Part shown: positions 6,151 through 35,784 of the stretch, piece by piece | How the letters are laid out: the number at the start of each line of letters is the position of its first letter | Position numbering within the stretch: the stretch's first letter is position 1 | Virus record (IMG/VR): IMGVR_UViG_3300049215_000529 | Location: 1 to 64,000 of that record | Strand: one strand, 5' to 3' | DNA length: 64,000 nt | Program-made: the position numbers and the translations under genes | The notes under the pieces: model-generated | What the model saw: only the letters and a program-made list of their open reading frames with translations | Databases searched by the model: none | What the model was told of the DNA's origin: nothing

Positions 6151-7410
6151 TTATATTAGTCCGATTTCTCCTAGTTGTTTTTCTAGGTCTTCGGCTCCTT
6201 GATCAATCTGCTCTTTGGATGTAGGTGGTTTTCCAGTAGTTGAGGCTGTGCCGCCCTCTTCCTCTGAACCAAACATTTCCTGGCTCTTATAAGATGCCTC
6301 AGTAAGATCCTTGGTAAGAGAATCTTCATGTGATTTCGCCTCTTTGAGTGCTTTATTGATATTTTGCATATCACCCATAAAGGTCTTAAGGGCATGAGCA
6401 ACATCGTCAAAATCGTCTGCTACCAATCCCTTGCCACCATGAAGAAATGGATCGACAACCTTCATTGCCCAACCCTTTTCTACAATCTGTCTTTGCTTGT
6501 AGCTTGGGTTATCAAAATCTTGTTCAATCTTCTGGAAATATGGAAGAATTTTGTCGGTAGCGCTACGGAAAGATTTATATGCATTAACAATTGCGTTTGT
6601 TTCTGGCTTCTTGATAGCTTCTAGCAATTCACCAGCATCTTTTGGTTTTTCTAGCTGATCAATATATGGCTCAATTGACTTATACAAATTATAGTAACCG
6701 GCTAGTTTGTTCTTGAAATTTTGCATCTCTTGAATAAACTCTGGTCTATAATTGTAGCCCGCACCAACACTAGTCTGAATTGAATCGTTTGATTCAATCA
6801 AATCGTCAATTTCGGCAACTAATTTTTGATAGTCTTGCTCGAAACCATCACTAAAAAATGCCATATGATTCTTGAGATAAATTCCGCCAATAAGGGCGGC
6901 AGCTGCTGCAACACCAGCAATAACTAAAGGAGCAACAGCTGTCTTAGTAAGTGGCTGGCTAGCTTGTAGTAAGCACAAGTCAGCTAATGCCATTAACTTA
7001 TCTTGATTCTTGTTATCTAAATCGTTAGCGACTCTAACCAAAGACAGCACCAATTCCTGAGCGTATTTGCGCTGCGTAGATAAACCATCTGGAGTTTTCA
7101 TTACGATATGAATATTGATGTTCTGGCGCTCGTTTTCGTTCTCTACTAAACCATTAAGTTTGTCGTAGGAAGGTAAAATAACCACAGAGTTTGGATGAGC
7201 GTCTTCCATAATATTGTGCTCATATTCCATGTCTTTAGGAGTGTTTGGTTTTACGCCATACAGAGCTTCGATAGCAGAAATGTCTAATGAATCGGCTCGA
7301 TGAGTTTTCTCTAATTTCTTCTTAGAATCCTCAGAATCGTTCGAGATCATTCCCTTTTCTTGGGCTATTTTGACAAAACTGTCGAAGACGTCGCTTTTCA
7401 TATTATTCAT
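6151..7410 (-). CDS. Putative internal head protein with a hydrophobic segment
   Basis: KxA motifs; hydrophobic VAPLVIAGVAAAAALIGGIYL; N-terminal region similar to 11041-12195. Confidence 0.5.
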   Translation of the reverse strand: MNNMKSDVFDSFVKIAQEKGMISNDSEDSKKKLEKTHRADSLDISAIEALYGVKPNTPKDMEYEHNIMEDAHPNSVVILPSYDKLNGLVENENERQNINIHIVMKTPDGLSTQRKYAQELVLSLVRVANDLDNKNQDKLMALADLCLLQASQPLTKTAVAPLVIAGVAAAAALIGGIYLKNHMAFFSDGFEQDYQKLVAEIDDLIESNDSIQTSVGAGYNYRPEFIQEMQNFKNKLAGYYNLYKSIEPYIDQLEKPKDAGELLEAIKKPETNAIVNAYKSFRSATDKILPYFQKIEQDFDNPSYKQRQIVEKGWAMKVVDPFLHGGKGLVADDFDDVAHALKTFMGDMQNINKALKEAKSHEDSLTKDLTEASYKSQEMFGSEEEGGTASTTGKPPTSKEQIDQGAEDLEKQLGEIGLI

Positions 7411-7428
7411 ACCTTATAATGTATAGGT

Positions 7429-8541
7429 TTATGGAGCCTTTGCCGCCACATCATCGATAAAATGGTCTACTATTTTTTTCTTAGAAGTAAACATTCTAGG
7501 AATGAAAACTATAGGTCCACCAGCAGATGTATGGTTATACCAATCAATAGCATCCGTAATAGCTTGAAATCCTGCCGTACTTCTGATATTAGACTCTTGA
7601 CCATCTAATCCACCGTAAACTTCTTTTGCAAAGTTAACCAGCATATTCTCAACGCTTTCTTTATTATTTGGAATATTTTCTATCCAATTATTATCAGTAC
7701 CATTAAAATTCTCTTCATGATAAGATGGGTTGAGTGGGAACTTAGTTTGCTTGGCAGTTATGGTTGGTGCGGTTGTAGTTGGAGCAGAAGTTTGTGCAAC
7801 TGGTTTTCCTTTTTGCATAGTATTGTCTAATGCGTTTGGTCTGCCCAATAAATGATTAATCATGTCACCAGCTACCATGAACCCAGCAGATGCTAACAAT
7901 ACTTTGAAAATTAGCCCTAGAACTCTAGACAAAATACTGCTCGTCGCGCTCTTTTTAACTGAGTACCTGGAGAATATAGATCCCAGATTCATGCCTCGAC
8001 GTTGTTGACCACTTTTCAACAACTGATCGTACTCATTCAAAGCTAATTTTAAATGCTTCGCTTCTCTAATAAGAACATATGACTTTGATTCTAATTCCTT
8101 TTGAGCTTCGGCTGCCTCTTCCTCAGTAGCTGGCTTTGCATGTTCTTGTACCGAGCTGGAAACCATTTCATCTACTTGTGAAGAGGATAGTGGTTTCCCC
8201 AATCCGATAGCGCTCTTAACTTTTTCATAAATGGATTTTAAAATTCCGAAAACATCGATATGGAAAACGGCTGCTGCTAAGCTTAACAGCGCAGTAAACC
8301 ACCATGGCAACCCAATCATTCTAAGTGTTGTGAATATTAGACCAGGTGCCAATAGTTTTAACAAACTATTGGTCTTATCATTTGGATCGATTGAGTTATC
8401 AGCGTATTGCTTTACCTTACCAACAAGATCTGACATAACGCCGCCAGTTTGGGCACTTTTAGATAGACCATCACCATATGCTAGTGCCTCCACTATCATT
8501 ATGTCTACATACAAACTGATGCGGTCTTGTGCATGACTCAT
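7429..8541 (-). CDS. Putative internal virion protein with 2-3 hydrophobic segments
   Basis: LLAPGLIFTTLRMIGLPWWFTALLSLAAAVF and VLGLIFKVLLASAGFMVAG; SKSAQ motif. Confidence 0.5.
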   Translation of the reverse strand: MSHAQDRISLYVDIMIVEALAYGDGLSKSAQTGGVMSDLVGKVKQYADNSIDPNDKTNSLLKLLAPGLIFTTLRMIGLPWWFTALLSLAAAVFHIDVFGILKSIYEKVKSAIGLGKPLSSSQVDEMVSSSVQEHAKPATEEEAAEAQKELESKSYVLIREAKHLKLALNEYDQLLKSGQQRRGMNLGSIFSRYSVKKSATSSILSRVLGLIFKVLLASAGFMVAGDMINHLLGRPNALDNTMQKGKPVAQTSAPTTTAPTITAKQTKFPLNPSYHEENFNGTDNNWIENIPNNKESVENMLVNFAKEVYGGLDGQESNIRSTAGFQAITDAIDWYNHTSAGGPIVFIPRMFTSKKKIVDHFIDDVAAKAP

Positions 8542-11038: not shown

Positions 11039-11040
11039 AT

Positions 11041-12195
11041 TTATGCCTTTGTCTGAACCCATTGATTGTAAAACTGCTCAACCTCTTGTTCATAAGTAGC
11101 CAACTCTTTTTCCAAGATAGTTGCCATCTGAGCTTCTTGAGTTTCTGGAACCTTACCCATTCTATTGGCAAGATCAGTTAAACTAGCTGACTCTTCTTTA
11201 ATCCAAGCCATTGCGGACGAATTACGAGCAACCGATCCTATCAATCCTGCTGACTGTAATTTTTGTCTTAGAGTTCCAATTCTCTTATAAAGACTTGATA
11301 GAGGAGAAGCTTCTGGAGTATACTCTTTCATTTGCTGAGTGACAGAAGGTTTATCCTGCTCAGTACCAGTGTCATTTTCCACCGGAGTACCAGCATCAAC
11401 ATCTCTGCGTTTAGCAATGGCTTGATCTGCCAAAGTGTTTGCTTGACGGAAAGCGCCCTGAACTCTACTCCAAGTATAATCAGAAAGTCCTCCCAATCCA
11501 TAAGTTCCACCACTTAAAATAGATGGATCCAATCTCTCATATAATATCTTTAGTTGCTTTTTAATTTCATTGATATTGTAAACGGTAGGATCTCCTGCAA
11601 GGCTTGAGATGCTGTTGACCCAATTGTTAATAGAAAAAGTAAGCTCAGGATTAGATGCCTTAGCAATTGCATTTACTTGATTCACAATACCATTAGCTAA
11701 GCGATTGACTTCGGCAAGTGATGCTGATTGTGCAAAAACATTCTTGACAGCCGAAAGCACTTCGGAAGCAGAAGATAGTTTACCAGTTGGATCCTTCTCT
11801 ACCATTGTGACATGCTTCAAGTGCTGATCTAAGATATCTTCAAAGACGGCTTCGCTACTATCAACGTCTTCTAGTTTGTGGCTTCCCTTGGGATGTGCGG
11901 CATGCACCAAGTCATCACCAGTTTCTTTATTTACTTCATAAAGAGTTTGTACCTGTTTGTATGCAAGTAGTTTTCCTTCTAGCTCAGTAGCATACTTATC
12001 AAAACCGGCGTGTCTCAAACCAGAACATAGCTTGAGTACATTTTCAGTTAAGCTCTCAGAAGGAGATAGATCCAATTCAGAGGCAGCTGCTACTTTAGTC
12101 ATAGGCTGGTCCTTGACCAATCCCTTGTCTCTAGCGAGCTTCTCTAAAGAACGCATAGTGACAGAATCTTCAAAATTGGTATGTTTAAAACTCAT
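11041..12195 (-). CDS. Putative internal head protein, paralogous N-terminus to 6151-7410
   Basis: EKLARDKG / AAHPKG / VEKDPTG match VKIAQEKG / DAHPNS / VMKTPDG. Confidence 0.5.
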   Translation of the reverse strand: MSFKHTNFEDSVTMRSLEKLARDKGLVKDQPMTKVAAASELDLSPSESLTENVLKLCSGLRHAGFDKYATELEGKLLAYKQVQTLYEVNKETGDDLVHAAHPKGSHKLEDVDSSEAVFEDILDQHLKHVTMVEKDPTGKLSSASEVLSAVKNVFAQSASLAEVNRLANGIVNQVNAIAKASNPELTFSINNWVNSISSLAGDPTVYNINEIKKQLKILYERLDPSILSGGTYGLGGLSDYTWSRVQGAFRQANTLADQAIAKRRDVDAGTPVENDTGTEQDKPSVTQQMKEYTPEASPLSSLYKRIGTLRQKLQSAGLIGSVARNSSAMAWIKEESASLTDLANRMGKVPETQEAQMATILEKELATYEQEVEQFYNQWVQTKA

Positions 12196-13073: not shown

Positions 13074-13116
13074 ACTTGACTCCAAAACACTACATATCAG
13101 CTCGTTTCCTTTTGAC

Positions 13117-13174
13117 CAACCAGAGCACTTCAATCATCGGGTTCAGAACCACAAAACTTCCAACATTGGGTTCA
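13117..13174 (-). repeat. Imperfect 29-bp tandem duplication of the 3' end of gene 13143-13832
   Basis: TGAACCCAATGTTGGAAGTTTTGTGGTTC then TGAACCCGATGATTGAAGTGCTCTGGTTG (22/29 identical). Confidence 0.8.
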
Positions 13175-13832
13175 TTGGAGTTGGTGGTGCCGTCACCATA
13201 GCAACAGCTGGATGAATAGAACTTGGGCGTCTAGTAGTCAAAAATCCATTTTCGCTAACATACAAATTAGCACGAACTGGATATTGCTGATTAGTTTCAT
13301 ATTGATCAGTTTGGAAAAACATTCTATTAAACCAAACTGTCATTCTGCCAGAACCCTGGGTGCTATCATCACCCGGAATATTAGCCACTTGATAGGTATA
13401 GTTAACTATGGTTCTGATAGCATTTGGCTGACCAGTACCAGTTAAATCAAAATTCAATAGCGTACCCGCTAAGAAGGTGATAACACCATTGTTAGGGTTA
13501 AGCACTACATCAATAGTAGAATTAAAACTACTAGATACTATATTAGGCTTTCTTAATTCTGCTTTAATGTCAATAGGGGTCACTAACTGACCACCAGGTC
13601 CAGGAACACCAATAGCAGGAACAATAACAACTTCGTTCCAAGAAACGTTAGTAAAAGCCCTGGTTTTGATATCATCAATGATACCAAGGGGAGCGGTACC
13701 ATTGCTAACAGTTGCCATTACTTGATTACCAATAACAGTTAGTTCGGCAATCATTCCTGGTTGAAATTCGGTAGACGGGTCACAAATAAAACTGGCGGGG
13801 AGCGTATTGCCCACTTGTACTAAGCGCAACAT
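13143..13832 (-). CDS. Putative capsid decoration-like protein, paralog of 5300-6010
   Basis: MLRLVQVG vs MSLKLLQPG; TQGSGRMTVW vs ATGSGKVTCW; ATG at 13832 (track 13841). Confidence 0.5.
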   Translation of the reverse strand: MLRLVQVGNTLPASFICDPSTEFQPGMIAELTVIGNQVMATVSNGTAPLGIIDDIKTRAFTNVSWNEVVIVPAIGVPGPGGQLVTPIDIKAELRKPNIVSSSFNSTIDVVLNPNNGVITFLAGTLLNFDLTGTGQPNAIRTIVNYTYQVANIPGDDSTQGSGRMTVWFNRMFFQTDQYETNQQYPVRANLYVSENGFLTTRRPSSIHPAVAMVTAPPTPMNPMLEVLWF

Positions 13833-13963
13833 TATTGCCACCCTTGCTTGTTAGAATCTGTTTTCATGAATATCCTTAGCCACTATTACCGTCTCACTGA
13901 TATTATATATCTATTTATGGAGAAGATTGCGAAAACTATAGCTAAAGCACGCACAACTAATTA

Positions 13964-14515
13964 TTAATCTTTTTCATCCTCAAAATCAGATTGACCTAAT
14001 GGATGTTCAACAATCTCAATTGCTTCATCATCAATATCAACATCCAGCAAATCATCAGCTTTGCCATCATCTGCCATATTGAATGGAGTTCCATGTTCCA
14101 AAAGATTTTTAACCTGTTTTTCAGGCGTTAATCCATGGGTATGAGGATCATGAATCTTGGTAGGGTTCTTTGGATGTGGAGGCTTTCCCCTAGCATCGTC
14201 CTCGTCGCCGTCCAATAGGCTCTTAAACGAGATTTCCTCCTTAGGAAGCTCCTTGGACTCCTTTGGCTCTTCTAACAAACTTTTAAATTCAATTACGTCA
14301 CCTGGCTCAATACCATCACGAGCAATTTTAGCTAAAAGTTTAAGAATACGATCAGAATGGGCAGTTAATCCTGCTTCATCTAGGATATCCATAGCGGAAT
14401 GAAGATAATCTGCTGCCTTAACAAGATTTTCCATACCTTGTTTCTCTGCATGAGTTTTTAGTTCACGCTGCATTCCAGCAATTAATTCATCTTCAAATAC
14501 ACTTTTCTTAATCAT
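13964..14515 (-). CDS. Hypothetical head-module protein
   Basis: FEDE N-terminus and helical module shared with 14512-14757. Confidence 0.55.
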   Translation of the reverse strand: MIKKSVFEDELIAGMQRELKTHAEKQGMENLVKAADYLHSAMDILDEAGLTAHSDRILKLLAKIARDGIEPGDVIEFKSLLEEPKESKELPKEEISFKSLLDGDEDDARGKPPHPKNPTKIHDPHTHGLTPEKQVKNLLEHGTPFNMADDGKADDLLDVDIDDEAIEIVEHPLGQSDFEDEKD

Positions 14516-14757
14516 TTGGATCCTGAAACAGAAGAAGTCTTGCCGGATAGGTCTTTAGCCAATCCTTGCAAGACTTCGGTAATTTCTGCGGCTTCTGCTG
14601 GCATACCAGCTTGTTCAAAGATCTCAGCAGCAGCATTTAAACAATTAACTGCTTGTGCTAGCTTATTGAATCCATGCTTGTTTTCAACTTGTGCTTCTAC
14701 AAGTTTATTTTCCATAGAACGATAGATCTCGTCTTCAAAGCTAGCGGTTTTGAACAT
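14512..14757 (-). CDS. Small head-module protein, paralog of 13964-14515
   Basis: MFKTASFEDEIYRSM vs MIKKSVFEDELIAGM; AGGA SD. Confidence 0.6.
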   Translation of the reverse strand: MFKTASFEDEIYRSMENKLVEAQVENKHGFNKLAQAVNCLNAAAEIFEQAGMPAEAAEITEVLQGLAKDLSGKTSSVSGSK

Positions 14758-14773: not shown

Positions 14774-15595
14774 TTATTTCTTTGAAGAAGACTTAGCTTT
14801 GGCTTTTTCCTTAGCAGCTTTTTCTTTCTCTTTTTCCTTGGCTGCCTTTTCCTTAGCTTTTTCCTTAGCTGCCTTTTCTTTTTCCTTGGAAGCCTTGTCC
14901 TTAGCAGATTGAGAATCGCTCTTAGAGTCTTTCTTGCTCTTCTTAGTTTCTTTTTCCTTCTTCTTGGCTTCTACAACTAGAGAGGCAAGTTTTAGGCTGA
15001 AGCTAGAGGACTTTTCCATTCCAACTTTGTCAAGAGCGGCGGAGGCGGTAAGTAGGCTGTCGATAGCAAGATCAAATGCTGCATCAACTACTACTTCATC
15101 GTCTGCGGAGCTGCTGTCAGAGCTGTCGGAAGAGGAATCTTTCTTTGCCTTGCGGGCATCGTTGTCGTCTGCGCTGCTAGAGTCGCTGTCAGAGGAGGAC
15201 TTTGCCTTACGGGCATCGTTATCGTCGTCAGCAGAACTGCTGTCAGAAGAGGACTCTTCCTTCTTCTTGCGAGCATCGTTCATGTCAGAAGCTGAACTGC
15301 TGTCACCAGAAGAGGATTCTTCCTTCTTCTTACGTGCATCGTTAGCATCTGCTGAACCACTGTCACATTTGCAGAAGTTCTTTGGTTTGCCGCACTCGTC
15401 GCACTTCTTGCCACCACGAGCATCGTTGTCGTCATCTGCCATTGAAGAGTCGCAGGAACAGCTTTCTTTGCTGCACTTTGAGCACTTAGCAGAAGCAGTC
15501 TTGTATTGTTCGCCAAACAAAGACTTGTGAGCTTCACTCTTAAGAACTGCATCCATTGTTGCAGCTACGAAATCTGATACACTTTTGTTAGTCAT
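14774..15595 (-). CDS. Highly charged low-complexity protein (Ser/Asp/Lys repeats, Cys clusters, KEKAA tail)
   Basis: Five NDAR repeats, CSKC/CDEC clusters; AAGGA SD; strong codon bias. Confidence 0.65.
   Translation of the reverse strand: MTNKSVSDFVAATMDAVLKSEAHKSLFGEQYKTASAKCSKCSKESCSCDSSMADDDNDARGGKKCDECGKPKNFCKCDSGSADANDARKKKEESSSGDSSSASDMNDARKKKEESSSDSSSADDDNDARKAKSSSDSDSSSADDNDARKAKKDSSSDSSDSSSADDEVVVDAAFDLAIDSLLTASAALDKVGMEKSSSFSLKLASLVVEAKKKEKETKKSKKDSKSDSQSAKDKASKEKEKAAKEKAKEKAAKEKEKEKAAKEKAKAKSSSKK
15100..15450 (-). repeat. Degenerate coding tandem repeats (SSADDNDARKKK units)
   Basis: Recurrent gcatcgtt and ctgctgtcaga on the plus strand. Confidence 0.7.
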
Positions 15596-15619: not shown

Positions 15620-18600
15620 TTAGAACAGTCTCTTAGAGGTCTTAGCAAATGCTGCGGACAATTGATTCCAATCATCAGACTCAGTTGGAGCAGCGCCATT
15701 AACTTCACCAGAACCTAGCATACCAACTAGTGGTAGGCGACCAGCTTCCTTGCGTAGCACTGGAGCATGCTTTGCAACTACTCTCTTCAAGGACTCGAAG
15801 CTATCATCATTAAACTTCATGATTTCATCGACCTGAGAAGAGACTGCGGCTCTATCACTGTGGCACAAACCACGTTCAACCATGTCATATGCTAGCTCGT
15901 AAGAACGTGCCAACTTGACTCTGTACTTGCCAAGCTCTGCTTCCAATTGAGCCTTGACGTGTTCCTTGACCAATTCGGTTGCGAATTCGCCACCACCATC
16001 AACTTCACCGAAGTACTTCTTGTAGTAAGCAACTGCATCCTTATCCAAACCTTCTGCTACTAGAGCATCTAGGTCCTTAGGATCTAGCTTGCCTTCAGAG
16101 ACAAGCTTGTAAATGGCTTCTGCTTCCTTACGTACCTTAGGTGGAGCTTTAGCGACGTCCATCATTTGCTTGTTGATTTCTGGAAGAGTTTCAACTTTTC
16201 CTAGGCTGTCAGATGGCTTGGTGTCAAGCTGGGTCTGACCATCAGCAAGGCGATCTGCTTCTTGCAACATATCGCTGAACTTAGCCTTGGACATATCTTG
16301 AATTTCGCCATCGTCTTCTTTGCCAAGAGCATCAGCTGCTAGCTTAGCACGAAGAGCGGCACGACCTTCTTTGCTATCGTAGGAGGCAGTAACAACTGCA
16401 GTTCCCTTTGGTAGCATGTCTAGAGCCTTTGGATCCTTAATGTCAACGTTTACTTCGTTAGCATCGTCGGTTGGCAATGCAGCATCCAAATCAAGAGCAG
16501 GGTCTGCATCAACAGAGTGCTCGTCGCTCATCAAATCCTTAACTGCATCCAAGTCAGCATTGGTCTCTTGGACTAGATTCATCAAGTCATCATCCGAATG
16601 ACTATCGTGTTCGGTTGTCATAGTTTCTCCCTCAGCTAGTGCTTCAAGTTCTGCTTCCATTTCGGCGCGCTTGACGATAGCCTGGGTACCACGAGCATAC
16701 TTGACGAAAGCAGTCATAAGCTGGAATCCGTCAGCAACAGCGGTCTTGGCTTCGTTCATTGCATCTTGTACGAGGGTGCCAACTAATTCCGTATTGGACG
16801 GGCTGACAGCGCCTTTATCGTAAAGACCTGCGATCATTTCAAGTTCAGATTGATGATCGTTAAGCTCTGCAACGGCTTCCTTCATAGCGTCTGTAAGGGC
16901 TCCGTTCAATTGCTTTCTTAGAGTGTTTAGAGTGGCAGTGCTAAAGCTATCAGAAGCTGTGGTTGCGCCCATTTCTGGAATTTCTCCACCTTCCATTGCG
17001 CCCATTTCTGCTTGCTCACCAGTCAAGGCTCTAACGCCTTCAACTAGGTCAGAAGATAGGTCTCTAACTTTTTCAGCTAGACTTAGTACGTTTTCCTTTG
17101 GATCACCAGACTTGCCAGTGTCTTCTGCTTGGGGCATAGGCTCACCAGATGGACCAGCCTCTGGTGCTGGAGCAGCAGGCTCAGCTTGTGCGGTCTTGTA
17201 TAGTTTGGCAACTTTCTCAGCGCCTTCCTTCTTGACCTTAGCAATCAAAGTGCTACCAAATTCCTTGGTTGCAATGTGGTCGTACATTAGTTCAGTACGT
17301 CCACCAGAAAGCTCGTCAACAGATGCGGTAAGAAGAAGCTTGTCGCCTAGGAATACTTCCCATGCGCTCTTAGCTAGGTTCTGAGTTCCGTCTTCGTTTG
17401 CTGCCTTGACGAATCTTGCTCTCAAGGATGCTCTTTGTAGCATTTCCTTACGCTTCTTTTCGTCAGGAGTTTCTGCGGAAGCTGGAGATGGATGCATTCC
17501 ATCAACTGGTCCGACGCCTGGGAATGGCTTTTGTCCGACCATTTGCTTGTCTTCGTAATCACGAAGTTGTTCGTTAAGCTTGTCTTTTGGATACTTAACT
17601 TGACCAGGAGTTGGGGTGTTAACATTACCCTTTTCCAAACCATTCTGGAAATAAGCTTGCTTGTTTTCTAAAGCACCCTTAGCTAAGTTAACAATTGCTT
17701 GACGGCGAATTGCTCTCTCTTCTGCTTCTGCGCGAGCAAGCATCTTTTTACGCTCTAACTCGTTTGCAGGGTCAGCAGACTCTGGGCTTGGATGCATTCC
17801 ATCAACAGGACCTACGCCTGGGAACGGAGATTGACCAACCATTTGCTTGTCTTCTTTTTCGCGAAGCTCTTCATTTAGTGGGTCCTTAGTATATTTTGGT
17901 TGACCTGGAGTAGGCTCGTTAACGCCGCCAGCACCCTGGTAGTAACCCTTTTTATTTAGATCTTGTGTTCCAGACATAGTTTCCTCTTGTGTTTGTTTTG
18001 TAGAAGTGTTTGCTAACTTATCCAAGGTTTGTTTCATTTGGCTCAATTTAGCTTCAATGGTCTTGGTGACCTCGCGAAGCTCGGCGATAGTATCTGCTCC
18101 AACATTGGCAGAGGCATATCTTGCAGTTGGAGGAGCCAATCCTGAATCGGCTGCAGGTCCAGTTAAACCAGGACCGGTCATTTGATCAGATGCCAGTTGA
18201 TTACCAGGTTCTTCCATATTTTCTTCATTTGAAATAGAAGATTGAAGTTTTTGGAAGTCCTCGATTGCCTTATCAACATCCTTTTTAAAGCTTTCAAGAT
18301 CTTTAGCAGTAACGCTTACATTGGTTACTTTTCCTGGATCTTTAGAAAACCCGTCGCCACCCTTATTTTCAAAAGAGAGATTGGCTACATAAGTATCTTC
18401 AGCCAATTTTTCTAGCTCTTTTTGCTTTGTTTCAACATAGCTATTAAGAGTGTTAGCGGCTGCAATGATGTGTTTGATGCTAGCTTTTGGATCGGCACCA
18501 TTAACAACAATGGATAGTTCAATTGGATTTAAGTCTACGTTAATTTCGCCGTAGCAGCTCTTGGTCTTCATATGGGTGCAGAAGTCTTGTTCGGCACGGG

Positions 18601-19198
18601 CAACACGTCCACAATCAGAGCAAATAGCGCGTCCGACAGCAGTACCCATAGAAACACAGTTAGAATATCCAGTGGCAACCTTACGAGCCAAATCTGGGTA
18701 ATTATGTTTATCTAATGCACATAGCGCGATAACCCTCTTGAGCCCGCGATCGTAGTAGGTATCAACAATAAAGCCTCTTACATGATCTACCGAGCTGGAT
18801 TTATGATCGATGCAAAGAGGCTTGCCTACCCACTTCTTATATGCTTTTACGAGTTCTTCCTCGGGGAATATGTCGCCATTAGAATTCTTATAAGGCTTAA
18901 TGCTTGGATCATTACTCATCCAGCGCCATGAGCCATCCTGCTTATTCCAGCCCACTTCAACGTGTTCGCCCTTGGCGTTTAGCTTAGGAGTGCCATCGTC
19001 ATTAAGCGCGGCAGCTTCAGCAGCATGCATCATAACAGCAGAAAAATAAAGGAAATCTTCAGCTTTAGGGGCAATCTTTTTTAGATTCGCAGCTACTTTT
19101 CTAAAGTTCTCTAGAATTTCTGGATTAACGGCAGGAATACAGGATGCTGTATTTTCAATCCTGTTAATCTCTATGAGTTCACCTTGTTTGATAAACAT
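15620..19198 (-). CDS. Prohead protease fused to a long scaffold-like polyprotein
   Basis: N-terminal NGDIF, CIDH (His), VSMGT (Ser), CSDC..FCTH, ELSIV..GADPKA as in HK97-type maturation proteases; ~900 aa acidic helical C-terminus; between portal and MCP. Confidence 0.8.
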   Translation of the reverse strand: MFIKQGELIEINRIENTASCIPAVNPEILENFRKVAANLKKIAPKAEDFLYFSAVMMHAAEAAALNDDGTPKLNAKGEHVEVGWNKQDGSWRWMSNDPSIKPYKNSNGDIFPEEELVKAYKKWVGKPLCIDHKSSSVDHVRGFIVDTYYDRGLKRVIALCALDKHNYPDLARKVATGYSNCVSMGTAVGRAICSDCGRVARAEQDFCTHMKTKSCYGEINVDLNPIELSIVVNGADPKASIKHIIAAANTLNSYVETKQKELEKLAEDTYVANLSFENKGGDGFSKDPGKVTNVSVTAKDLESFKKDVDKAIEDFQKLQSSISNEENMEEPGNQLASDQMTGPGLTGPAADSGLAPPTARYASANVGADTIAELREVTKTIEAKLSQMKQTLDKLANTSTKQTQEETMSGTQDLNKKGYYQGAGGVNEPTPGQPKYTKDPLNEELREKEDKQMVGQSPFPGVGPVDGMHPSPESADPANELERKKMLARAEAEERAIRRQAIVNLAKGALENKQAYFQNGLEKGNVNTPTPGQVKYPKDKLNEQLRDYEDKQMVGQKPFPGVGPVDGMHPSPASAETPDEKKRKEMLQRASLRARFVKAANEDGTQNLAKSAWEVFLGDKLLLTASVDELSGGRTELMYDHIATKEFGSTLIAKVKKEGAEKVAKLYKTAQAEPAAPAPEAGPSGEPMPQAEDTGKSGDPKENVLSLAEKVRDLSSDLVEGVRALTGEQAEMGAMEGGEIPEMGATTASDSFSTATLNTLRKQLNGALTDAMKEAVAELNDHQSELEMIAGLYDKGAVSPSNTELVGTLVQDAMNEAKTAVADGFQLMTAFVKYARGTQAIVKRAEMEAELEALAEGETMTTEHDSHSDDDLMNLVQETNADLDAVKDLMSDEHSVDADPALDLDAALPTDDANEVNVDIKDPKALDMLPKGTAVVTASYDSKEGRAALRAKLAADALGKEDDGEIQDMSKAKFSDMLQEADRLADGQTQLDTKPSDSLGKVETLPEINKQMMDVAKAPPKVRKEAEAIYKLVSEGKLDPKDLDALVAEGLDKDAVAYYKKYFGEVDGGGEFATELVKEHVKAQLEAELGKYRVKLARSYELAYDMVERGLCHSDRAAVSSQVDEIMKFNDDSFESLKRVVAKHAPVLRKEAGRLPLVGMLGSGEVNGAAPTESDDWNQLSAAFAKTSKRLF
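17429..17953 (-). repeat. Internal ~75-aa duplication in the protease/scaffold
   Basis: EDKQMVGQxPFPGVGPVDGMHPSP occurs twice (about 17729-17953 and 17429-17663). Confidence 0.85.
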
Positions 19199-28852: not shown

Positions 28853-29462
28853 ATGGGTCAATCTCTGTATCAGATCCAGTATCACGAGAGCCTAAGTTAC
28901 TGTAGCTTTCATAACTTGCTGGGTTGTTCTTCTTAGCCTCTAAATTCATCTTACTAACCAATCTAATTAAATTATCGTCGTCCCAATCCTTGGCATCAGA
29001 GACGTCAGATTTGTGAATGGATCTGATTTTCTCAATGATTGCTGGAACTGGTAAATTGCCCTTGCTGTCTCTAATATAGTTCTCTAAAGTTTTGTGAATC
29101 TGTGGCATCTTCTTGAGAACGATTGGAATCATGTCAACTTTCTTTTCCATAGCATCATTTTGATCCGATGCTACTTTAGTTTTGACAGATACATTCTCAT
29201 CAGCAGATTGCTTGATTTTGTCTAGATAAGCAGACAATCCACTTCTTTCCTTCATATCTTCTACTGCTGCCTCTACAGAAGGATACTTTGATTTTCCATT
29301 CATGATGGAATTAATTTGATCAAACAAAGAGTTCTCAATAGTGCGAGGTTGTACAGCACCCTTCTCCAACTTTCTTTGAAATTGGCGAAGCCAGTGATCC
29401 TCATCAATGCTGGAATCAGCCTCTCTCGAAACTACTGGTTGGTGTCTGGTATACTTGGACAT
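28809..29462 (-). CDS. Hypothetical head-module protein
   Basis: Likely start 29462 coupled to the upstream stop (track 29480); TKVASD motif. Confidence 0.55.
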   Translation of the reverse strand: MSKYTRHQPVVSREADSSIDEDHWLRQFQRKLEKGAVQPRTIENSLFDQINSIMNGKSKYPSVEAAVEDMKERSGLSAYLDKIKQSADENVSVKTKVASDQNDAMEKKVDMIPIVLKKMPQIHKTLENYIRDSKGNLPVPAIIEKIRSIHKSDVSDAKDWDDDNLIRLVSKMNLEAKKNNPASYESYSNLGSRDTGSDTEIDPSNTDAFHALTPVKD

Positions 29463-30406
29463 TATTTCTTCTCGCCCCAAATGTTTGCGCCGTTGTTGTA
29501 ATTAGCTGCCCAATCCATATTGTCGCTATCCTCAACATGCAAATCTTGATCTGGCATGAAGCCTCTGTCTTGACGAACGGCATAACCCATGTCCATCAAA
29601 AGTTGCATTACTTCAGCTTGTTCGCGCTTGTTTAGATTATAGTACTTGACTTGTCTGTCAAACAAATCCTCAATGTCATGACCTGCAGAAACCATTCCGT
29701 TAATACAGACTCGGGCAATTCTTGAAGTCAATAGTGGTGCCACGATGTAGATGCCCTGAACTCCGGTTACCTTTTGTGCTTCTTTAACAATGCCATCAGG
29801 CTCGAACTCGGACTTCTTCTTGCGGCTGGTCTTCTTGTGTTTCTTTACTTTGTCAAGACGATCGTGTAGTCTCTCAATACCATTATCAATGGTGGCTCTG
29901 ACTTTTTCAATTTGGTCTGCATCTAATTCGCCATCCAAATCCAATCTCATTGCCTTGGAAATTTCGTTATCTAGTCTGTCTAGATAAGCGACTGCTCTCT
30001 CAAGTCCTGCGGTATCATAACCGGAATGCTTTGGAACATCATCACAACGTTCTTTAACCCAAGCAATAAAACCTTTGGCGCCTCTAGATTCCCAATCCCA
30101 CTTAGGATCCTTTTTGGATTTCTTAGCATCATTGTCATCGATATTGTCTTTATCGTCTTCGTGAACTTCAATGTGTGGCTCTGGCTCAGGGTCATGGGTG
30201 CCTGGAGGAGCGCCGGGAAGATCTTCAATTACAATAGAAATTTCGCCCGGTTCGCCTACTTCAAGTGGAGACATGGTAGCCTCAGCTGGATGATCTGGAT
30301 GTACCTCGGAAACTTCCAATGGTACCAGTTCCATAGGACTTCCGCCCATTGGCATTCCACCTGATGGGTCAACAACTAGTAATTGTGCTTCTGACTGTAG
30401 TGACAT
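29462..30406 (-). CDS. Hypothetical head-module protein
   Basis: 314 aa, GAGG SD, acidic N-terminus, VKEAQ motif. Confidence 0.55.
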   Translation of the reverse strand: MSLQSEAQLLVVDPSGGMPMGGSPMELVPLEVSEVHPDHPAEATMSPLEVGEPGEISIVIEDLPGAPPGTHDPEPEPHIEVHEDDKDNIDDNDAKKSKKDPKWDWESRGAKGFIAWVKERCDDVPKHSGYDTAGLERAVAYLDRLDNEISKAMRLDLDGELDADQIEKVRATIDNGIERLHDRLDKVKKHKKTSRKKKSEFEPDGIVKEAQKVTGVQGIYIVAPLLTSRIARVCINGMVSAGHDIEDLFDRQVKYYNLNKREQAEVMQLLMDMGYAVRQDRGFMPDQDLHVEDSDNMDWAANYNNGANIWGEKK

Positions 30407-31577: not shown

Positions 31578-32337
31578 TGGTTTTCCCTTTAACTGCTTTC
31601 ATATAGTAAGGATATACGGCTTCGGTAATAGGAATATGATTCCATAGACCTAATTTAGTAATTAAATAGCTAGATTTATCGGCATCACGCTTGAAGGCTT
31701 CATTTAGCTTTTCTACCATGGACTTCTCAGTGGAAATTTTAACCGATTCTGGATTCTTTTGTACAAATTCAACAATAGCATCATCTAAATCAAAATCCAA
31801 CTTAGCAGCTAAATAAATGGCTCGAATCACTCTATTTCTATTGGAAGTGAGTGTGGTTTTTGGATCTAAACAAGTTCTGATTTTTCTTTCTTTGATGTCT
31901 TTAAACCCTCTATTGGTTGGATCTACAATATTTTTTAGGTCCATTGATAGTAGTAAAGCGTTACATGTGAAGTCACGACTAAACATCTCTTTTTGCATAT
32001 CGGTAGCATTGGGAATGCCACGAGCAGCTAAAATTTGTTCGATGCCTGGGACATTAAAATTAGATGAGAAGTCCATTTTCAGAGTACCCACAAAGATAGT
32101 GCTATGACCATCTTCCATAGTTTTTCTGGTGATGTTGTACTTCTTTTTTAGTTCAATAGCAAATTCTTGAGACAAATAGTCTACAGTCTTATCGCCTGTA
32201 GTAATATCCAAATCTGAAATATTCTCTAAGTGCCCCATATACTTATCGCGGGGCGTACCACCACAAATATAGGGTTTAGCTGACCCTATTTTCTTTTGTA
32301 CTTCCTGCATCGTGTGGAGTAGTTCTCGGAGTTTCAT
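31564..32337 (-). CDS. Short class II nucleotidyltransferase (CCA/poly(A) polymerase head domain) with altered templating motif
   Basis: CGGTPRD, DLD, SRDFTCNA, IVDPT..GFKDI, SNRNRVIRA in place of EDxxRxxRA. Confidence 0.8.
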   Translation of the reverse strand: MKLRELLHTMQEVQKKIGSAKPYICGGTPRDKYMGHLENISDLDITTGDKTVDYLSQEFAIELKKKYNITRKTMEDGHSTIFVGTLKMDFSSNFNVPGIEQILAARGIPNATDMQKEMFSRDFTCNALLLSMDLKNIVDPTNRGFKDIKERKIRTCLDPKTTLTSNRNRVIRAIYLAAKLDFDLDDAIVEFVQKNPESVKISTEKSMVEKLNEAFKRDADKSSYLITKLGLWNHIPITEAVYPYYMKAVKGKTNVPK

Positions 32338-32350
32338 TCATTTGTTTCAA

Positions 32351-34300
32351 TTATACGGTTGGGGCGACAGGCGGACGAGGTGCAGCTGCTGGAGGGGCGC
32401 CTAAATCTTCTGCGATTTCTACTTCTGGAGTTTCCTTGGCAGGACCAGCTAATTCGGCGGCTTCTTGTTCTTTTCTCATCTTCTTACGAGCCTTTTCTTT
32501 ATCTTCATCTTGTTGCAATTTTCCCTTAAGTGCAGCCACCTCTGGTTTTTCAGTAGTCTCTCCGCCCTTCAAATCAATTTCATTACCAGCCATACCACCA
32601 CGTAGCTTGGATAAAATGTCTTCCAAACGAGTAGAGATATAGTTATTTGATTCAAGAGCTTTGTTGGTTGCTTCGGATAGAGAAGGGAAATAGGAGGCAA
32701 GTCCAAGACTGCCTAACATCATATCTACAATTCCAAGTTGTCTTGGAACTTCTCTGGTCTTGTAAATTTTGGCTAAGTCTTCTAGTTTGGCAACTACGTC
32801 AGCAACAGTGATGTTTGCAAATACTGCATCAACTTTGTTATCAAAGTCGCTAGCAGCGGGCACTGCAGCTTCTCCTGGTGGAGCAGCAATATCATCTTCA
32901 GTTACTTCCAAGGGCTCTTCGGTTGCGGGAGCATCTGGTGCAACAGGTGCTTTTGGAGTTGGGATCGGAGCGGGATCCAATGGTGCTGGTGCTGGAGCTG
33001 TAGTCATTGGCTCATCAATTGGTCCTGGTGGAGCTGCTTGTGCCTCTGTAACCAATAGCATATCATCGTCAGCTACATTGATGTTGTCGTCAACTTCTAA
33101 TCCATCATCTTCTGCTACACCCTCATCAGTAGTGAACTTGGATGTTTCCATGCCTTCCAAAAACTCACTAATGCCTTTCGATTTTTGTGGCTCTACTGGC
33201 AAAGAGTTTGGGGCTTGAGTTGTGGTTGCAGCTTGTCCTCCGCCACCTTGTGGATTGCCTGGAAAATTTTCGTTAGGACCAGTTTCTGGAACGCTATCAG
33301 AAGGCGCGTTTTGAGGCATACCTGGACCCATAGATGGCAATCCTCCTGGAGCGCCTGGATGACCAGCACCTGTTGGATCGTCTGGTGGCGTAGCTGGAGG
33401 AATTACATTTCCAGCGCCTGCTTCACCTTGCTCTTTTACCTCTTCTCCAGATTGTGCTGGGCTTTGAGCCAAAGAATGTAGTACAGATGCTGCCTTAGTA
33501 AAACCTTGCCTTTGAAGTACGTTAGCTTGACGCACAATCATATCTTCATACAATCTAGTTGAAGAGCTAATCTTGTTAACCATCTGAATCCTCTTCTTTA
33601 ATTCGTAGATGGATTCCAGTAGTGATTCGAATTCTTTTCCAGAGAAGATTTGACCATCAGGCGATCTTAGCAATTTTTCTGCTGAGTCCAAGCGTCCAAT
33701 GATTTTATTTCTTTGCTTCTCGATAATTTGTTTACGCTCAGTCTTTTCGGTAACAGAGTCTCTGGCGAAATCAATGTCACGTCCAGTAACTTGTGGTTCT
33801 GGCTCTTTGACTGGATCTGGTTTCACATGTAAAAAATAACCGGGAGCACCGTTTTCATACCATAGTTGTGCAAATTTGTATTTCAAGTGATCTCCTGATT
33901 CATGATATTTTAGCCAGTTCAAGAAGTCATAAGTCTCCATGATATTCCAACCTGAAGTAGCTTTACGAATAGCATCTACACGACCACTGCCACTTTTCTC
34001 CGTTTGATAAATAGAACGAACTGCTGCCAACCACTTTTGGGTATTGTGCTGCCCAGGGATGTGCATGTATTGGTCGAAATTTGGATATGCGTCCTTTTTG
34101 CTAAAATCTAGGTGAGGTATGGACTCTGGATCAAATTTAGAGTAGTCGATGCCCACCTCATCAAAATACTTCATCAACTTTTCAAGCTTAGTCTTCATTT
34201 CTGGATTCAACACCAATTCTTCATCAGATGGACGAGTAGCCATTTCCAATTGTTCCTTGGATGGCATATCGATAATTGGTGAGTGGTGTTTGTTGGTCAT
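32351..34300 (-). CDS. Large head-module protein with Pro/acidic linkers
   Basis: 649 aa; KDAY, KFAQ motifs; helical module. Confidence 0.55.
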   Translation of the reverse strand: MTNKHHSPIIDMPSKEQLEMATRPSDEELVLNPEMKTKLEKLMKYFDEVGIDYSKFDPESIPHLDFSKKDAYPNFDQYMHIPGQHNTQKWLAAVRSIYQTEKSGSGRVDAIRKATSGWNIMETYDFLNWLKYHESGDHLKYKFAQLWYENGAPGYFLHVKPDPVKEPEPQVTGRDIDFARDSVTEKTERKQIIEKQRNKIIGRLDSAEKLLRSPDGQIFSGKEFESLLESIYELKKRIQMVNKISSSTRLYEDMIVRQANVLQRQGFTKAASVLHSLAQSPAQSGEEVKEQGEAGAGNVIPPATPPDDPTGAGHPGAPGGLPSMGPGMPQNAPSDSVPETGPNENFPGNPQGGGGQAATTTQAPNSLPVEPQKSKGISEFLEGMETSKFTTDEGVAEDDGLEVDDNINVADDDMLLVTEAQAAPPGPIDEPMTTAPAPAPLDPAPIPTPKAPVAPDAPATEEPLEVTEDDIAAPPGEAAVPAASDFDNKVDAVFANITVADVVAKLEDLAKIYKTREVPRQLGIVDMMLGSLGLASYFPSLSEATNKALESNNYISTRLEDILSKLRGGMAGNEIDLKGGETTEKPEVAALKGKLQQDEDKEKARKKMRKEQEAAELAGPAKETPEVEIAEDLGAPPAAAPRPPVAPTV

Positions 34301-35055
34301 GACTCGTTAATCTTCTTATTGATGGTCTCGTTAAGCAATTTAGCTTCAGCAAGTTTCATCTCAGTTGATGGCGGAGCTTCTGGAGTTGGCATCTTTAGCT
34401 TAGCCATTTTCTCATTGAATACTTCCATGAAATATAGGGAAGTTTCCAAATCCATTTGAGATAAAACCTCTTTGATTACATCATGAAATACCGAAATATG
34501 CTGGTCTACGACCTGCAAAGTCACGTTGTGCTGGATGATTTGATCAGGGCGAACTTCCTTCCACTTATGGTATTTATCTAATAAATTACCCAAGGTATCA
34601 GCATATTCTGTGATCAAGCGGTCTATTCTAGTATTAACATCCCTAGGATTTTCCTGAATATAATCAAAAATTTGAGACAAACGAGTCTCTATATTAATAG
34701 CTAAATTAGCTAAAATTCTATCAACATCTAGCTCTCCATTGGCAAGCTTGAGCATAGCATCTTTATATGCTGGATTGCCCTTGACTGCTAAATCTAGCTG
34801 ATCAGAGGTGTTGGTTGCCAGAGCCGTTTTAGTTTTAGCTAAATCTTCTTGAATATCATTATAGAAATCTAAATATGTATTTTGAAATGACTTTAGAAGT
34901 TTCTCAGTTAAGACAAACTTCGATTCACTTACATTGGTATATTTAGCTTTTAACCATTCATGTATCTCGGCAGGCGATTGACCAGTCACCAACTTAGCAA
35001 TAATTTCATCCTTATCTGGATGCTCCAGAATTTTTTTGTAAGCTGGTTTGTTCAT
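34297..35055 (-). CDS. Possible terminase small subunit (HTH plus coiled coil)
   Basis: HPDKDEIIAKLVTGQSPAEIHEWL HTH-like start; upstream of terL. Confidence 0.4.
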   Translation of the reverse strand: MNKPAYKKILEHPDKDEIIAKLVTGQSPAEIHEWLKAKYTNVSESKFVLTEKLLKSFQNTYLDFYNDIQEDLAKTKTALATNTSDQLDLAVKGNPAYKDAMLKLANGELDVDRILANLAINIETRLSQIFDYIQENPRDVNTRIDRLITEYADTLGNLLDKYHKWKEVRPDQIIQHNVTLQVVDQHISVFHDVIKEVLSQMDLETSLYFMEVFNEKMAKLKMPTPEAPPSTEMKLAEAKLLNETINKKINES

Positions 35056-35064
35056 TAAAATCCT

Positions 35065-35784
35065 TCATGGCTTGTTGTAACCAAGTCTGCCTTCACGGGT
35101 ATCGAAGATAGCGTGATATGGAACGTTAAGAGAGTTCTGAGTTTGTTGAGCAACGTCACCACCTGGAACCTTGGCACCATTGTTCAATTCGAAACCGGTC
35201 TCAAAGTTATAGGTTTTCTTATCCATCTCGCATTGCCACATGTGTTCACCCACACGAGCAATTTGAACGCCTGGATGATCTGGACAATATCTGGAGCTAA
35301 GTGGAGCTTCCAAAATATTGTATCTCTTGGTCATCTCACTTTTATCAATTGCCTTTTCTGACTTGTTAATCAAGTTAGCTTCAGCCAAATCTTCACGAGG
35401 TTGCTCGTACTTTTTCTTTAGTTCGACTAATCTTTGCTCTTGTAGATCTTTTCTCTCAGCATAAGCATTTGGCGGAGCTGCAATAGATAGTAGTAGTTCG
35501 TCAAGTACAGAAGCTTGCTTCTTTAGACCTGGATCACCGGAAGCGTCGAAAGCATTGGCAAGATTAGCAATTTCCTGGATGTTTTCAGGAGTTAAATTGG
35601 ATTCTGGAGGTGGTTCCATTTCGGATACTTGTTCAGCGGCACTCTTTAAAAGAGCGGCAGCAAGAACACAATTCTCGGCAACAACTTTCATGCTGTCGTC
35701 GTGATATTCGGCTAATAGCAAAGCCTCATTGTCTGGACTTTCCAGCCAAGATGCGATAGCTTGTAACATTTCTGCGATTCTCAT
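35065..35784 (-). CDS. Hypothetical head-module protein
   Basis: Helical module LANAFDASG; C-terminal CPDH..C. Confidence 0.55.
   Translation of the reverse strand: MRIAEMLQAIASWLESPDNEALLLAEYHDDSMKVVAENCVLAAALLKSAAEQVSEMEPPPESNLTPENIQEIANLANAFDASGDPGLKKQASVLDELLLSIAAPPNAYAERKDLQEQRLVELKKKYEQPREDLAEANLINKSEKAIDKSEMTKRYNILEAPLSSRYCPDHPGVQIARVGEHMWQCEMDKKTYNFETGFELNNGAKVPGGDVAQQTQNSLNVPYHAIFDTREGRLGYNKP

What the first reader, a model, noticed from the sequence alone, without database searches (positions are those of the whole stretch)
6151..35784. Recurrent A-x-x-L-D-x-x-G helical module in seven head-module proteins: possible capsid-targeting tag
Seen: LHSAMDILDEAGLTAHSDRILKLL (13964), LNAAAEIFEQAGMPAEAAEITEVL (14512), LLTASAALDKVGMEKSS (14774), VLKLCSGLRHAGFDKYATELEGKL (11041), LVRVANDLDNKNQDKLMALADLCL (6151), IANLANAFDASGDPGLKKQASVLDELL (35065), IVRQANVLQRQGFTKAASVLHSLAQ (32351). 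The module is often bracketed by K-x-A sites, and the 81-aa 14512-14757 protein is little more than this module. Inference: a portable docking hairpin that loads cargo into the prohead, functionally like the T4 capsid targeting sequence.
Basis: partly seen in the sequence, partly recalled or inferred. Interest (0 to 1): 0.7.

Follow-up and report, generated by a model that had tools for sequence, protein, structure and literature searches.

The report
Three-gene head family with TPR-like hairpin
Only two, probably three, neighbouring genes of this giant phage truly share the helical module, not seven; it is a TPR-like hairpin at the very start of small head-region proteins, and its proposed capsid-targeting role is untested.

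Summary
All seven quoted strings are present in the stated ORFs. As a seven-member motif they are not above chance. The pattern occurs 8 times in 293 genome ORFs against 9.2 expected.

What is real is a tandem gene family directly downstream of the prohead protease-scaffold gene.
- The 183-aa (13964-14515) and 81-aa (14512-14757) proteins are certain paralogues over residues 1-68 (family HMM E 6.5e-19).
- The 273-aa protein (14774-15595) probably carries the same domain, split by a ~145-aa acidic insert (HHalign P 1.6e-5; best control family 0.0017).
- The N-terminus of 11041-12195 is borderline (P 0.0016).
- 6151, 32351 and 35065 are unsupported.

The domain is an N-terminal helix plus one TPR-like helix-Gly-helix hairpin (AlphaFold2; TPR-repeat profile P 5e-8). 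It starts at or within a few residues of residue 1 in the listed hits of 728 metagenomic clusters. It occurs once or twice per related genome, always in tandem.

A capsid-docking or propeptide role is plausible. It fits the gene position, the variable tails and a shared acidic D-D-x-N-D-A-K/R motif, but it is untested; co-folding gave no answer. The phage is an uncultured relative of Bacillus phage G.

The parts
14312..14515 (-). N-terminal module (aa 1-68) of the 183-aa protein encoded by 13964-14515.
   Evidence: The family has 178 homologues with aa 1-67 conserved. AlphaFold2 gives helix 4-47, a turn at Gly49 and helix 51-67, with pLDDT about 80-88. A TPR-repeat profile aligns to aa 28-61 at P 5.4e-8.
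13964..14311 (-). Remainder of the 183-aa protein: a disordered linker, the DEDDAR motif (aa 104-109, 14189-14206), a conserved block (family consensus ...TKGLTPEKMVxNLKxHGTVFNMADD) and an acidic tail ending in FEDE.
   Evidence: Alignments A1 and A2. Of 248 family proteins, 177 carry the NLKxHGTxFN-like block and 182 end in a FEDE-like motif. AlphaFold2 shows only one short helix here, 131-141.
14548..14757 (-). N-terminal module (aa 1-70) of the 81-aa protein encoded by 14512-14757, which is almost the whole protein.
   Evidence: blastp to the 183-aa protein gives 33% identity over 69 aa, E 1.5e-7. The family HMM gives E 6.5e-19. Orthologues of 71-187 aa occupy the same syntenic position in related loci.
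15524..15595 (-). Probable first part (aa 1-24) of a split module in the 273-aa protein encoded by 14774-15595.
Evidence: Aa 1-24 joined to aa 169-211 aligns colinearly to the whole module: score 28.9, P 1.6e-5, probability 79%. AlphaFold2 gives helices 6-18 and 21-34.
15092..15523 (-). Roughly 145-aa low-complexity Cys/Ser/Asp-rich insert with five D-x-N-D-A-R motifs (aa 55-148), interrupting the module in the 273-aa protein.
   Evidence: Motif scan. AlphaFold2 predicts aa 35-165 as disordered.
14963..15091 (-). Probable second part (aa 169-211) of the split module, the helix-Gly192-helix hairpin.
   Evidence: HHalign. The segment is 86% conserved among orthologues against 53% for the whole protein. 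AlphaFold2 gives helices 166-190 and 197-218 at low pLDDT.
11950..12189 (-). N-terminus (aa 3-82) of the 384-aa protein encoded by 11041-12195: a possible, unproven divergent copy of the module.
   Evidence: Deep profile-profile alignment is colinear, module 2-65 to aa 3-82, at P 0.0016 and probability 16%. Control windows reach P 0.004-0.007. As a single sequence the protein ranks 86 of 293. Its language-model neighbours overlap those of the 183-aa protein, which is a lead only.
6970..7041 (-). It is not a member of the module family.
   Evidence: It has no Gly at the turn position. HHalign gives P 0.3 and aligns elsewhere in the protein. It ranks 58 of 293. The protein has a predicted transmembrane segment at aa 154-180.
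33464..33538 (-). Membership is not supported.
   Evidence: HHalign P is 0.004-0.08, within the range of the controls. The region is paralogous to 23160-24449, whose aligned stretch lacks the A-x-x-L part of the motif.
35491..35571 (-). Membership is not supported.
   Evidence: HHalign P is 0.02-0.06, within the range of the controls. The segment is internal, not N-terminal.
15620..19198 (-). The 1192-aa prohead protease-scaffold fusion, directly upstream of the three-gene family. The protease domain is about aa 105-213, and a conserved DDxN[DE][AV] motif lies at aa 911-917 (16448-16468), before the conserved C-terminal helical domain.
   Evidence: phrog_18299, head maturation protease, E 1.1e-15. 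Phage G gp19 matches at E 1.1e-29 and gp21 at E 0.005. Motif data come; D and N of the motif are invariant in 15 homologues.
4146..5159 (-). Major capsid protein (337 aa).
   Evidence: 54% identical to Bacillus phage G gp27 (phmmer E 6.9e-99; blastp 3e-112). The search found 1754 homologues; the 120 listed are 86-98% identical, nearly all carry PF25209, and one is named 'Major capsid protein' by its source.
13143..13841 (-). Highly conserved 232-aa protein directly downstream of the family. It is possibly a cement or decoration protein.
   Evidence: phmmer gives E about 1e-140 in relatives. The ESM Atlas neighbours include cement and decoration clusters at scores of 0.78-0.84, which is a lead only.
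30122..30139 (-). DDNDAK motif (aa 90-95) in the protein encoded by 29462-30406, at the boundary between an acidic Pro-rich N-terminal region and the rest of the protein.

Best explanation
The 'seven-protein module' is not one element.

The real feature is a tandem family of adjacent genes placed directly after the prohead protease-scaffold gene: 13964-14515, 14512-14757 and probably 14774-15595. They share a domain of about 68 residues that starts at residue 1. The domain is an amphipathic helix followed by a single TPR-like helix-Gly-helix hairpin. In the 273-aa protein the domain appears to be split by a ~145-aa acidic insert.

The other segments lie in unrelated proteins (11041 is borderline; 6151, 32351 and 35065 are unsupported). 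They are conserved helix-turn-helix stretches that look alike because this signature is generic for helical hairpins.

Proposed working, which is inferred and not shown: the N-terminal TPR-like domain is a protein-protein docking element. Through it these small, otherwise disordered and highly charged proteins join the scaffold core during prohead assembly. The acidic motif D-D-x-N-D-A-K/R is a candidate maturation-protease site that would detach the domain from the tail. The motif lies after the module in the 183-aa family, five times in the 273-aa protein, in 29462-30406, and at the hinge before the scaffold's C-terminal domain.
For: Shown:
- Paralogy of the 183-aa and 81-aa proteins.
- A large family with the module at, or within a few residues of, the N-terminus in all 148 non-TPR proteins among the 150 listed. 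In total 728 clusters score E<=1e-3, with protein lengths of 74-390 aa.
- Only 1-2 copies per related locus or genome, at one syntenic site and in tandem where there are two.
- A predicted hairpin with Gly49 at the turn.
- TPR_12-type repeat proteins hit by the module profile, and the reciprocal profile match at P 5.4e-8.
- The split-module alignment of 14774: P 1.6e-5 against 0.0017 or worse in the 22 other families scanned the same way, with a compatible secondary structure.
- No chance excess of the seven-member motif, and failure of leave-one-out. ORFs outside the head region score equally.

Gene context: portal, protease-scaffold and MCP were identified.

Motif D.[DN]DA[KR]: 7 occurrences against 0.29 expected, all in head-region proteins. 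It is also present in the scaffold-protease of the distant clade, and its D and N are invariant at the scaffold hinge. Tails after the module are variable.
Against: - No evidence that any of these proteins is in proheads or virions.
- Co-folding with the MCP and with each other gave no answer: score 0.06, mark 0.32.
- The phage is uncultured, and the closest cultured relative, phage G, has no detectable homologue.
- The split-module reading of 14774 came from a splice chosen after inspection, although it stands out in a uniform scan. The AlphaFold2 model of 14774 has low confidence.
- The D-D-x-N-D-A-K/R motif matches a strict regex in only 64 of 248 family members. It sits in low-complexity acidic/basic sequence, where repeats can spread without any function.
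- HHalign P-values in this helical protein set look somewhat anti-conservative: 5% of control windows fall below 0.01.
Confidence: 0.55

Rival explanations
1. One reading: one portable docking hairpin is shared by seven head-module proteins and acts like the T4 capsid targeting sequence to load different cargo into the prohead.
For: - All seven segments are locally well conserved among orthologues.
- Four of the seven proteins begin with M-x(3-8)-F-[ED]-[DES]; genome-wide there are 6 such ORFs against 1.8 expected, post hoc p about 0.02.
- K-x-A is weakly enriched near the segments.
Against: - The motif count is at chance.
- Leave-one-out fails.
- P-values for the extra proteins, 0.004-0.3, equal those of unpicked proteins (29462, 23160, 10040) and of ORFs outside the head region.
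- In 6151, 32351 and 35065 the segment is internal, not N-terminal.
- The module profile finds only 1-2 tandem copies in the near-complete and complete relatives searched.
- The segments were chosen by eye for likeness, so their high ranks are not independent evidence.
Confidence: 0.06
2. The three-gene family encodes auxiliary scaffolding or assembly proteins. Their hairpin binds the coat protein or dimerises, as in the P22 scaffold C-terminal helix-turn-helix or phi29 gp7 (comparison from general knowledge). They leave the prohead intact rather than being cargo with a cleaved propeptide.
For: - The genes lie between the protease-scaffold gene and the cement/MCP genes.
- The proteins are small and helical, with disordered charged tails.
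- Nine listed family members consist of the module alone, so they carry no cargo.
Against: - Foldseek found no PDB match at all, including scaffold proteins.
- The hairpin is N-terminal, not C-terminal as in P22.
- A dedicated scaffold domain already exists in the 1192-aa fusion.
- Co-folding with the MCP gave no answer.
Confidence: 0.22
3. The family is not a virion or assembly component. It would be, for example, a late regulator, a DNA or protein mimic using the acidic FEDE-ended tail, or an anti-defence protein, with the TPR-like domain serving as a general interaction or oligomerisation domain. Its place in the head region would be incidental.
For: - TPR-like hairpins are general interaction modules.
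- Non-structural genes are interspersed in the region: a Tyr-phosphatase-like gene, homing endonucleases and nucleotidyltransferases.
- There is no particle evidence.
Against: - The position next to the protease-scaffold gene is strictly conserved across both clades.
- The acidic motif is shared with the scaffold-protease.
Confidence: 0.15

Closest known systems
T4 capsid targeting sequence (CTS) of internal proteins IPI-III
   Same: Both are N-terminal elements of head-region proteins. A candidate protease motif lies downstream of the module. C-terminal parts vary among relatives. In T4 the CTS targets proteins to the scaffold core and is removed by gp21 (PMC9026906).
   Different: The T4 CTS is 10 residues and unstructured; this module is about 68 residues and predicted to fold. 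There is no sequence likeness. The candidate site D-D-x-N-D-A-K/R is unlike T4's L/I-x-E. Here the element is shared only by tandem paralogues. Packaging has not been tested.
TPR_12 / TPR_10-type tetratricopeptide repeats
   Same: The helix A-Gly turn-helix B signature is shared. The module profile hits two TPR repeat proteins 8-9 times each. The reciprocal profile match is P 5.4e-8 over 34 columns.
   Different: There is a single unit, not an array. An extra N-terminal helix is present. No Pfam TPR model reaches its cut-off: ComR_TPR E 0.13 and SNAP E 0.011.
N-terminal propeptides of giant-phage head and ejection proteins (SPN3US, phiKZ)
   Same: SPN3US head proteins have long N-terminal propeptides of 20-254 aa that are removed by the prohead protease, at several motif copies within one propeptide. 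Paralogous head proteins occur there too (PMC10052503).
   Different: The phage lineage and protease family context are unrelated. The SPN3US motif is of the A-X-E type. For this phage there are no proteomic data.
Scaffolding-protein helical hairpins (P22 gp8 C-terminal helix-turn-helix, phi29 gp7); comparison from general knowledge
   Same: These are small helical hairpins encoded between the protease and coat genes.
   Different: This hairpin is N-terminal. No fold or sequence match was found. A separate scaffold domain is present in the 1192-aa fusion.
Bacillus phage G (Donellivirus) head module
   Same: The portal is 33% identical, the MCP 54% identical, and the protease is homologous. The order portal ... 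protease ... scaffold ... MCP is the same.
   Different: Phage G has separate protease and scaffold genes and no detectable homologue of the module family.

Membership tests
One homologous module family comprising all seven proteins | Significant sequence or profile similarity of each segment to the others | tested here: not met
   Met for 13964 and 14512. Probable for 14774 only when read as a split domain. Borderline for 11041. 6151, 32351 and 35065 are at control level.
One homologous module family comprising all seven proteins | Motif occurs more often than chance and preferentially in head proteins | tested here: not met
   8 observed against 9.2 expected. ORFs outside the head region score equally.
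T4-type capsid targeting sequence | Located at the extreme N-terminus of the cargo protein | tested here: met
   Met for the true family: the module starts at or within a few residues of residue 1 in all 148 non-TPR hits listed. Not met for 6151, 32351 and 35065, where the segment is internal.
T4-type capsid targeting sequence | Followed by a prohead-protease cleavage site and removed on maturation | tested here: inconclusive
   A candidate D-D-x-N-D-A-K/R motif follows the module in the 183-aa family and recurs in the scaffold and in 29462. There are no cleavage data, and a strict regex matches only 64 of 248 family members.
T4-type capsid targeting sequence | Same tag on several unrelated cargo proteins of one phage | tested here: not met
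   Only 1-2 tandem copies per genome, including the 95%- and 100%-complete relatives. Tails do vary between orthologues.
T4-type capsid targeting sequence | Necessary and sufficient for packaging of a fused reporter | not testable with these tools
   This needs an experiment. Co-folding gave no answer.
TPR-like helical hairpin | Helix-turn-helix of about 34-42 residues with small or hydrophobic signature positions and Gly at the turn | tested here: met
   AlphaFold2 hairpin with Gly49 at the turn. Profile match to TPR_12-type repeats at P 5.4e-8.
TPR-like helical hairpin | Reaches a curated Pfam TPR/SNAP threshold, and occurs in tandem arrays of three or more units | tested here: not met
   Best scores are SNAP 15.7 bits (cut-off 25) and ComR_TPR 12.3 bits (cut-off 26.5). 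There is one unit only.
Phage scaffolding protein | Encoded between the protease/portal and the coat gene, and largely helical | tested here: met
   Gene order. AlphaFold2 secondary structure.
Phage scaffolding protein | Binds the major capsid protein | tested here: inconclusive
   Complex prediction of MCP + 183-aa + 81-aa gave score 0.06 and the verdict 'no answer'.

The most novel reading that the evidence does not exclude
The N-terminal helix plus TPR-like hairpin is a genuine folded capsid-targeting propeptide of phage-G-like megaphages. It docks small charged proteins, possibly including the 384-aa protein and others that begin with K-x-x-x-F-E-D, onto the protease-scaffold core. It is then cut off at D-D-x-N-D-A-K/R, a previously undescribed cleavage specificity for this protease lineage. 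That would give a way to load foreign cargo into very large capsids.
Probability: 0.2. Interest if true: 0.6.

Novelty: new member of a known kind. Interest (0 to 1): 0.3.

Why it matters
Megaphages related to phage G are abundant in metagenomes but almost entirely uncultured, and their head assembly is unknown. This work corrects an over-extended motif call. It also defines a widespread unannotated family (728 clusters) with a clear domain boundary, and it locates the MCP, the protease-scaffold gene and a candidate processing motif. Together these make the assembly of these capsids testable, for example by procapsid reconstitution. If the domain is a targeting propeptide it would be a folded counterpart of the T4 CTS. 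If not, the finding is an ordinary tandem paralogue family.

Tried and rejected
- Literal regex and K-x-A counts: no genome-wide excess.
- Seven-segment HMM with leave-one-out: fails.
- PHROGs and Pfam on the seven proteins: no meaningful family.
- Megablast and tblastn of the family against cultured phages: nothing.
- Foldseek of the 183-aa model against the PDB: 0 matches.
- Pfam HK97 and lambda-E capsid models on the genome: no hit. The MCP was found instead through phage G gp27.
- Adding the spliced 14774 sequences to the profile did not raise the 11041 score.
The scaffold C-terminal domain was therefore not co-folded.
- That co-folding job gave no answer.
- The ESM Atlas gave only unnamed viral clusters.
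- I considered and rejected 11041-12195 and 13143-13841 as the MCP.

Full report
**Context.** The window is the first 64 kb of a 204,190-bp linear IMG/VR virus record that CheckV rates 47% complete. Almost all genes are on the minus strand. Nothing close exists among cultured phages. The nearest cultured relative is Bacillus phage G:
- portal 33% identical;
- phage G MCP gp27 54% identical to window 4146-5159;
- phage G protease gp19 homologous to the N-terminus of the 1192-aa product of 15620-19198, and gp21 weakly similar to its C-terminal part.

The region therefore reads: terminase 26434-28296, portal 24516-26375, protease-scaffold fusion 15620-19198, and MCP 4146-5159. Many unannotated genes lie in between. 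The MCP is 86-98% identical in the 120 listed of 1754 metagenomic homologues, from contigs of up to about 480 kb. This is a widespread clade of uncultured megaphages.

**Checking the observation.** All seven strings are present. The coordinates given in the finding are ORF ends, not segment positions. As a motif the set is not above chance:
- The pattern A..[LIF][DEQR]..G occurs 8 times in 293 ORFs against 9.2 +/- 3.1 in shuffles. It catches only three of the seven segments, and also terminase and unrelated ORFs.
In leave-one-out it recovers only the 81-aa/183-aa pair. The other held-out proteins rank 3 to 86 of 287, match elsewhere in the protein, or do not match.
- K-x-A is not enriched genome-wide. 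Near the segments it is weakly enriched, 10 against 4.8 +/- 2.0, a post hoc comparison.

**What is real.**
- The 183-aa (13964-14515) and 81-aa (14512-14757) proteins are paralogues over their first ~68 residues (blastp E 1.5e-7; family HMM E 6.5e-19; HHalign probability 100%).
- The 183-aa protein has 178 detected homologues.
- An exhaustive profile search with the module found 728 clusters at E<=1e-3. In every ordinary hit listed, the module starts at or within a few residues of residue 1, in proteins of 74-390 aa.
- In 23 related loci the module occurs in one or two genes, always at the same place. That place is just after the protease-scaffold gene and the acidic 273-aa gene, and just before a very conserved 232-aa gene that may encode a cement protein.
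- Six-frame searches of five large relatives, including a 95%- and a 100%-complete genome, found 1-2 copies, in tandem where there are two.
- After the module the proteins differ. Most carry a conserved block (family consensus TKGLTPEKMVxNLKxHGTVFN) and an acidic tail ending in FEDE. Nine listed members are the module alone. Others have unrelated tails.

**Structure of the module.**
- AlphaFold2 with 120 sequences gives helix 4-47, a turn at the nearly invariant Gly49, and helix 51-67 (pLDDT about 80-88). The rest is disordered apart from one short helix.
- Foldseek found no PDB match.
- Two outliers of the exhaustive search are TPR_12-type repeat proteins. Each matches the module core 8-9 times.
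- A profile of their 42-aa repeats aligns to module residues 28-61 at P 5.4e-8.
This signature is generic in helical hairpins, which explains why look-alikes can be found by eye in other helical proteins.

**The other five proteins.**
The P-values are 0.02-0.09, like those of unpicked neighbours such as 10040, 29462, 23160 and a GIY-YIG endonuclease.
- With the deeper module profile, control windows reach P 0.004-0.007.
Those rank 4, 7, 12, 58 and 86.

Two cases deserve more.
1. *14774-15595, the gene adjacent to the pair.* Its N-terminus (MTNKSVSDFVAATMDAVLK...) resembles the start of the module, and its aa 169-211 resemble the hairpin.
   - Joining aa 1-24 to aa 169-211 gives a full-length colinear alignment (score 28.9, P 1.6e-5, probability 79%).
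- The same scan, N-terminal 24 residues plus every 43-aa window, over 22 other families gave at best 19.8 (11041).
   - AlphaFold2 gives matching helices and a disordered 35-165, at low confidence.
   - I read this as a third tandem paralogue whose module is split by a ~145-aa acidic insert, with probability about 0.75.
2. *11041-12195.* Its N-terminus aligns colinearly, aa 3-82 to module 2-65, at P 0.0016. I give membership a probability of about 0.25.

6151, 32351 and 35065 are internal segments with no support. The 32351 segment lies in a region paralogous to 23160-24449, which lacks the A-x-x-L part of the motif. All seven segments are better conserved than their proteins as a whole. They are real structural elements of their own proteins, just not one family.

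**A second motif.**
- D-x-[DN]-D-A-[KR] occurs 7 times in the genome against 0.29 expected: once in the 183-aa protein after the module, five times in the insert of the 273-aa protein, and once in 29462-30406.
- In relatives it recurs in these families and also in the scaffold-protease of the distant clade, near aa 855.
- In this phage's scaffold, the aligned position (aa 911-917, DDANEVN) keeps the invariant D and N, just before the conserved C-terminal domain.
- This is the pattern expected of a maturation-protease site, by analogy with T4 and SPN3US. That is inference only.

**Mechanism.**
- Shown: a tandem paralogue family with an N-terminal TPR-like domain, at a fixed place in the head gene block, with charged disordered tails.
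- Inferred: the domain docks these proteins to the scaffold core, and the acidic motif is where the protease releases them.
- Co-folding of the MCP, the 183-aa protein and the 81-aa protein gave score 0.06, 'no answer', which counts neither way.
- The rivals cannot be excluded: an auxiliary scaffold that is not cargo, or a non-virion interaction protein.

**Verdict.** The hairpin and its N-terminal placement hold for two to three adjacent paralogues. The idea of a tag shared by seven proteins does not hold, and the capsid-targeting function is untested. The family is unannotated and widespread. As a kind of thing it is ordinary: a helical interaction domain on small head-region proteins.

Noticed in passing
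window 15152-15433, 14189-14206, 30122-30139, 16448-16468 (all minus strand); also L011 and L015-L023 at about aa 855 of the scaffold-protease: The acidic motif D-D-x-N-D-A-K/R (often followed by KK) occurs 7 times against 0.29 expected. All copies are in head-region proteins, and the D and N are invariant at the hinge before the scaffold's C-terminal domain. It is a candidate prohead-protease site or another short linear motif.
   Followed up: partly
window 12300-13133 (-) and 3150-4073 (-): Free-standing homing endonuclease genes lie in the head block. A GIY-YIG gene (Pfam E 4e-10) sits between the 232-aa gene and 11041-12195, which are adjacent in relatives. A LAGLIDADG-like gene (E 4.9e-7) lies right after the MCP gene.
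   Followed up: partly
window 15620-19198 (aa ~415-440 and ~515-540) and 30471-31577 (aa 4-29): A ~26-aa motif (GYYQGxGGxNEPTPGxxKYxxDP...) occurs at aa 415-440 of the protease-scaffold protein and, at 69% identity, at the N-terminus of another protein. A second copy near aa 515-540 was seen by eye only. Its function is unknown.
   Followed up: no
window 6151-7410, 7429-8541, 10040-11062, 22060-23157, 20137-20907 (all -): Between the scaffold and MCP genes lie proteins with predicted transmembrane segments (6151: aa 154-180; 7429: two). There is also a peptidoglycan-binding-like sequence (10040, by eye), a weak glucosaminidase match (22060, E 0.03) and a Tyr-phosphatase-like protein (20137, E 2e-6). 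These may be ejection or envelope-penetration proteins.
   Followed up: no
window 4146-5159 (-): The MCP is extremely conserved (86-98% identity in the 120 listed of 1754 metagenomic homologues) while neighbouring head genes diverge to 30-60%. It has a 44-residue N-terminal extension relative to phage G gp27.
   Followed up: partly
Genome-wide 6 ORFs do, against 1.8 +/- 1.4 expected (post hoc p about 0.02). The start is conserved in the 6151 family in both clades, and in the 11041 family only in the close clade. It may be a short N-terminal signal, or it may be coincidence.
   Followed up: partly
window 1334-2569 (+) and 31564-32337 (-): Two paralogous poly(A) polymerase / CCA-adding-type nucleotidyltransferase genes (Pfam PolyA_pol, E 1.8e-37 and 1e-13). 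One of them sits inside the structural region.
   Followed up: no
window 32351-34300 and 23160-24449 (-); portal 24516-26375 C-terminus: The 649-aa and 429-aa proteins are paralogous over about 200 aa and both carry long Pro/Ala/Gly-rich stretches. The portal ends in a Gly/Pro-rich tail.
   Followed up: no
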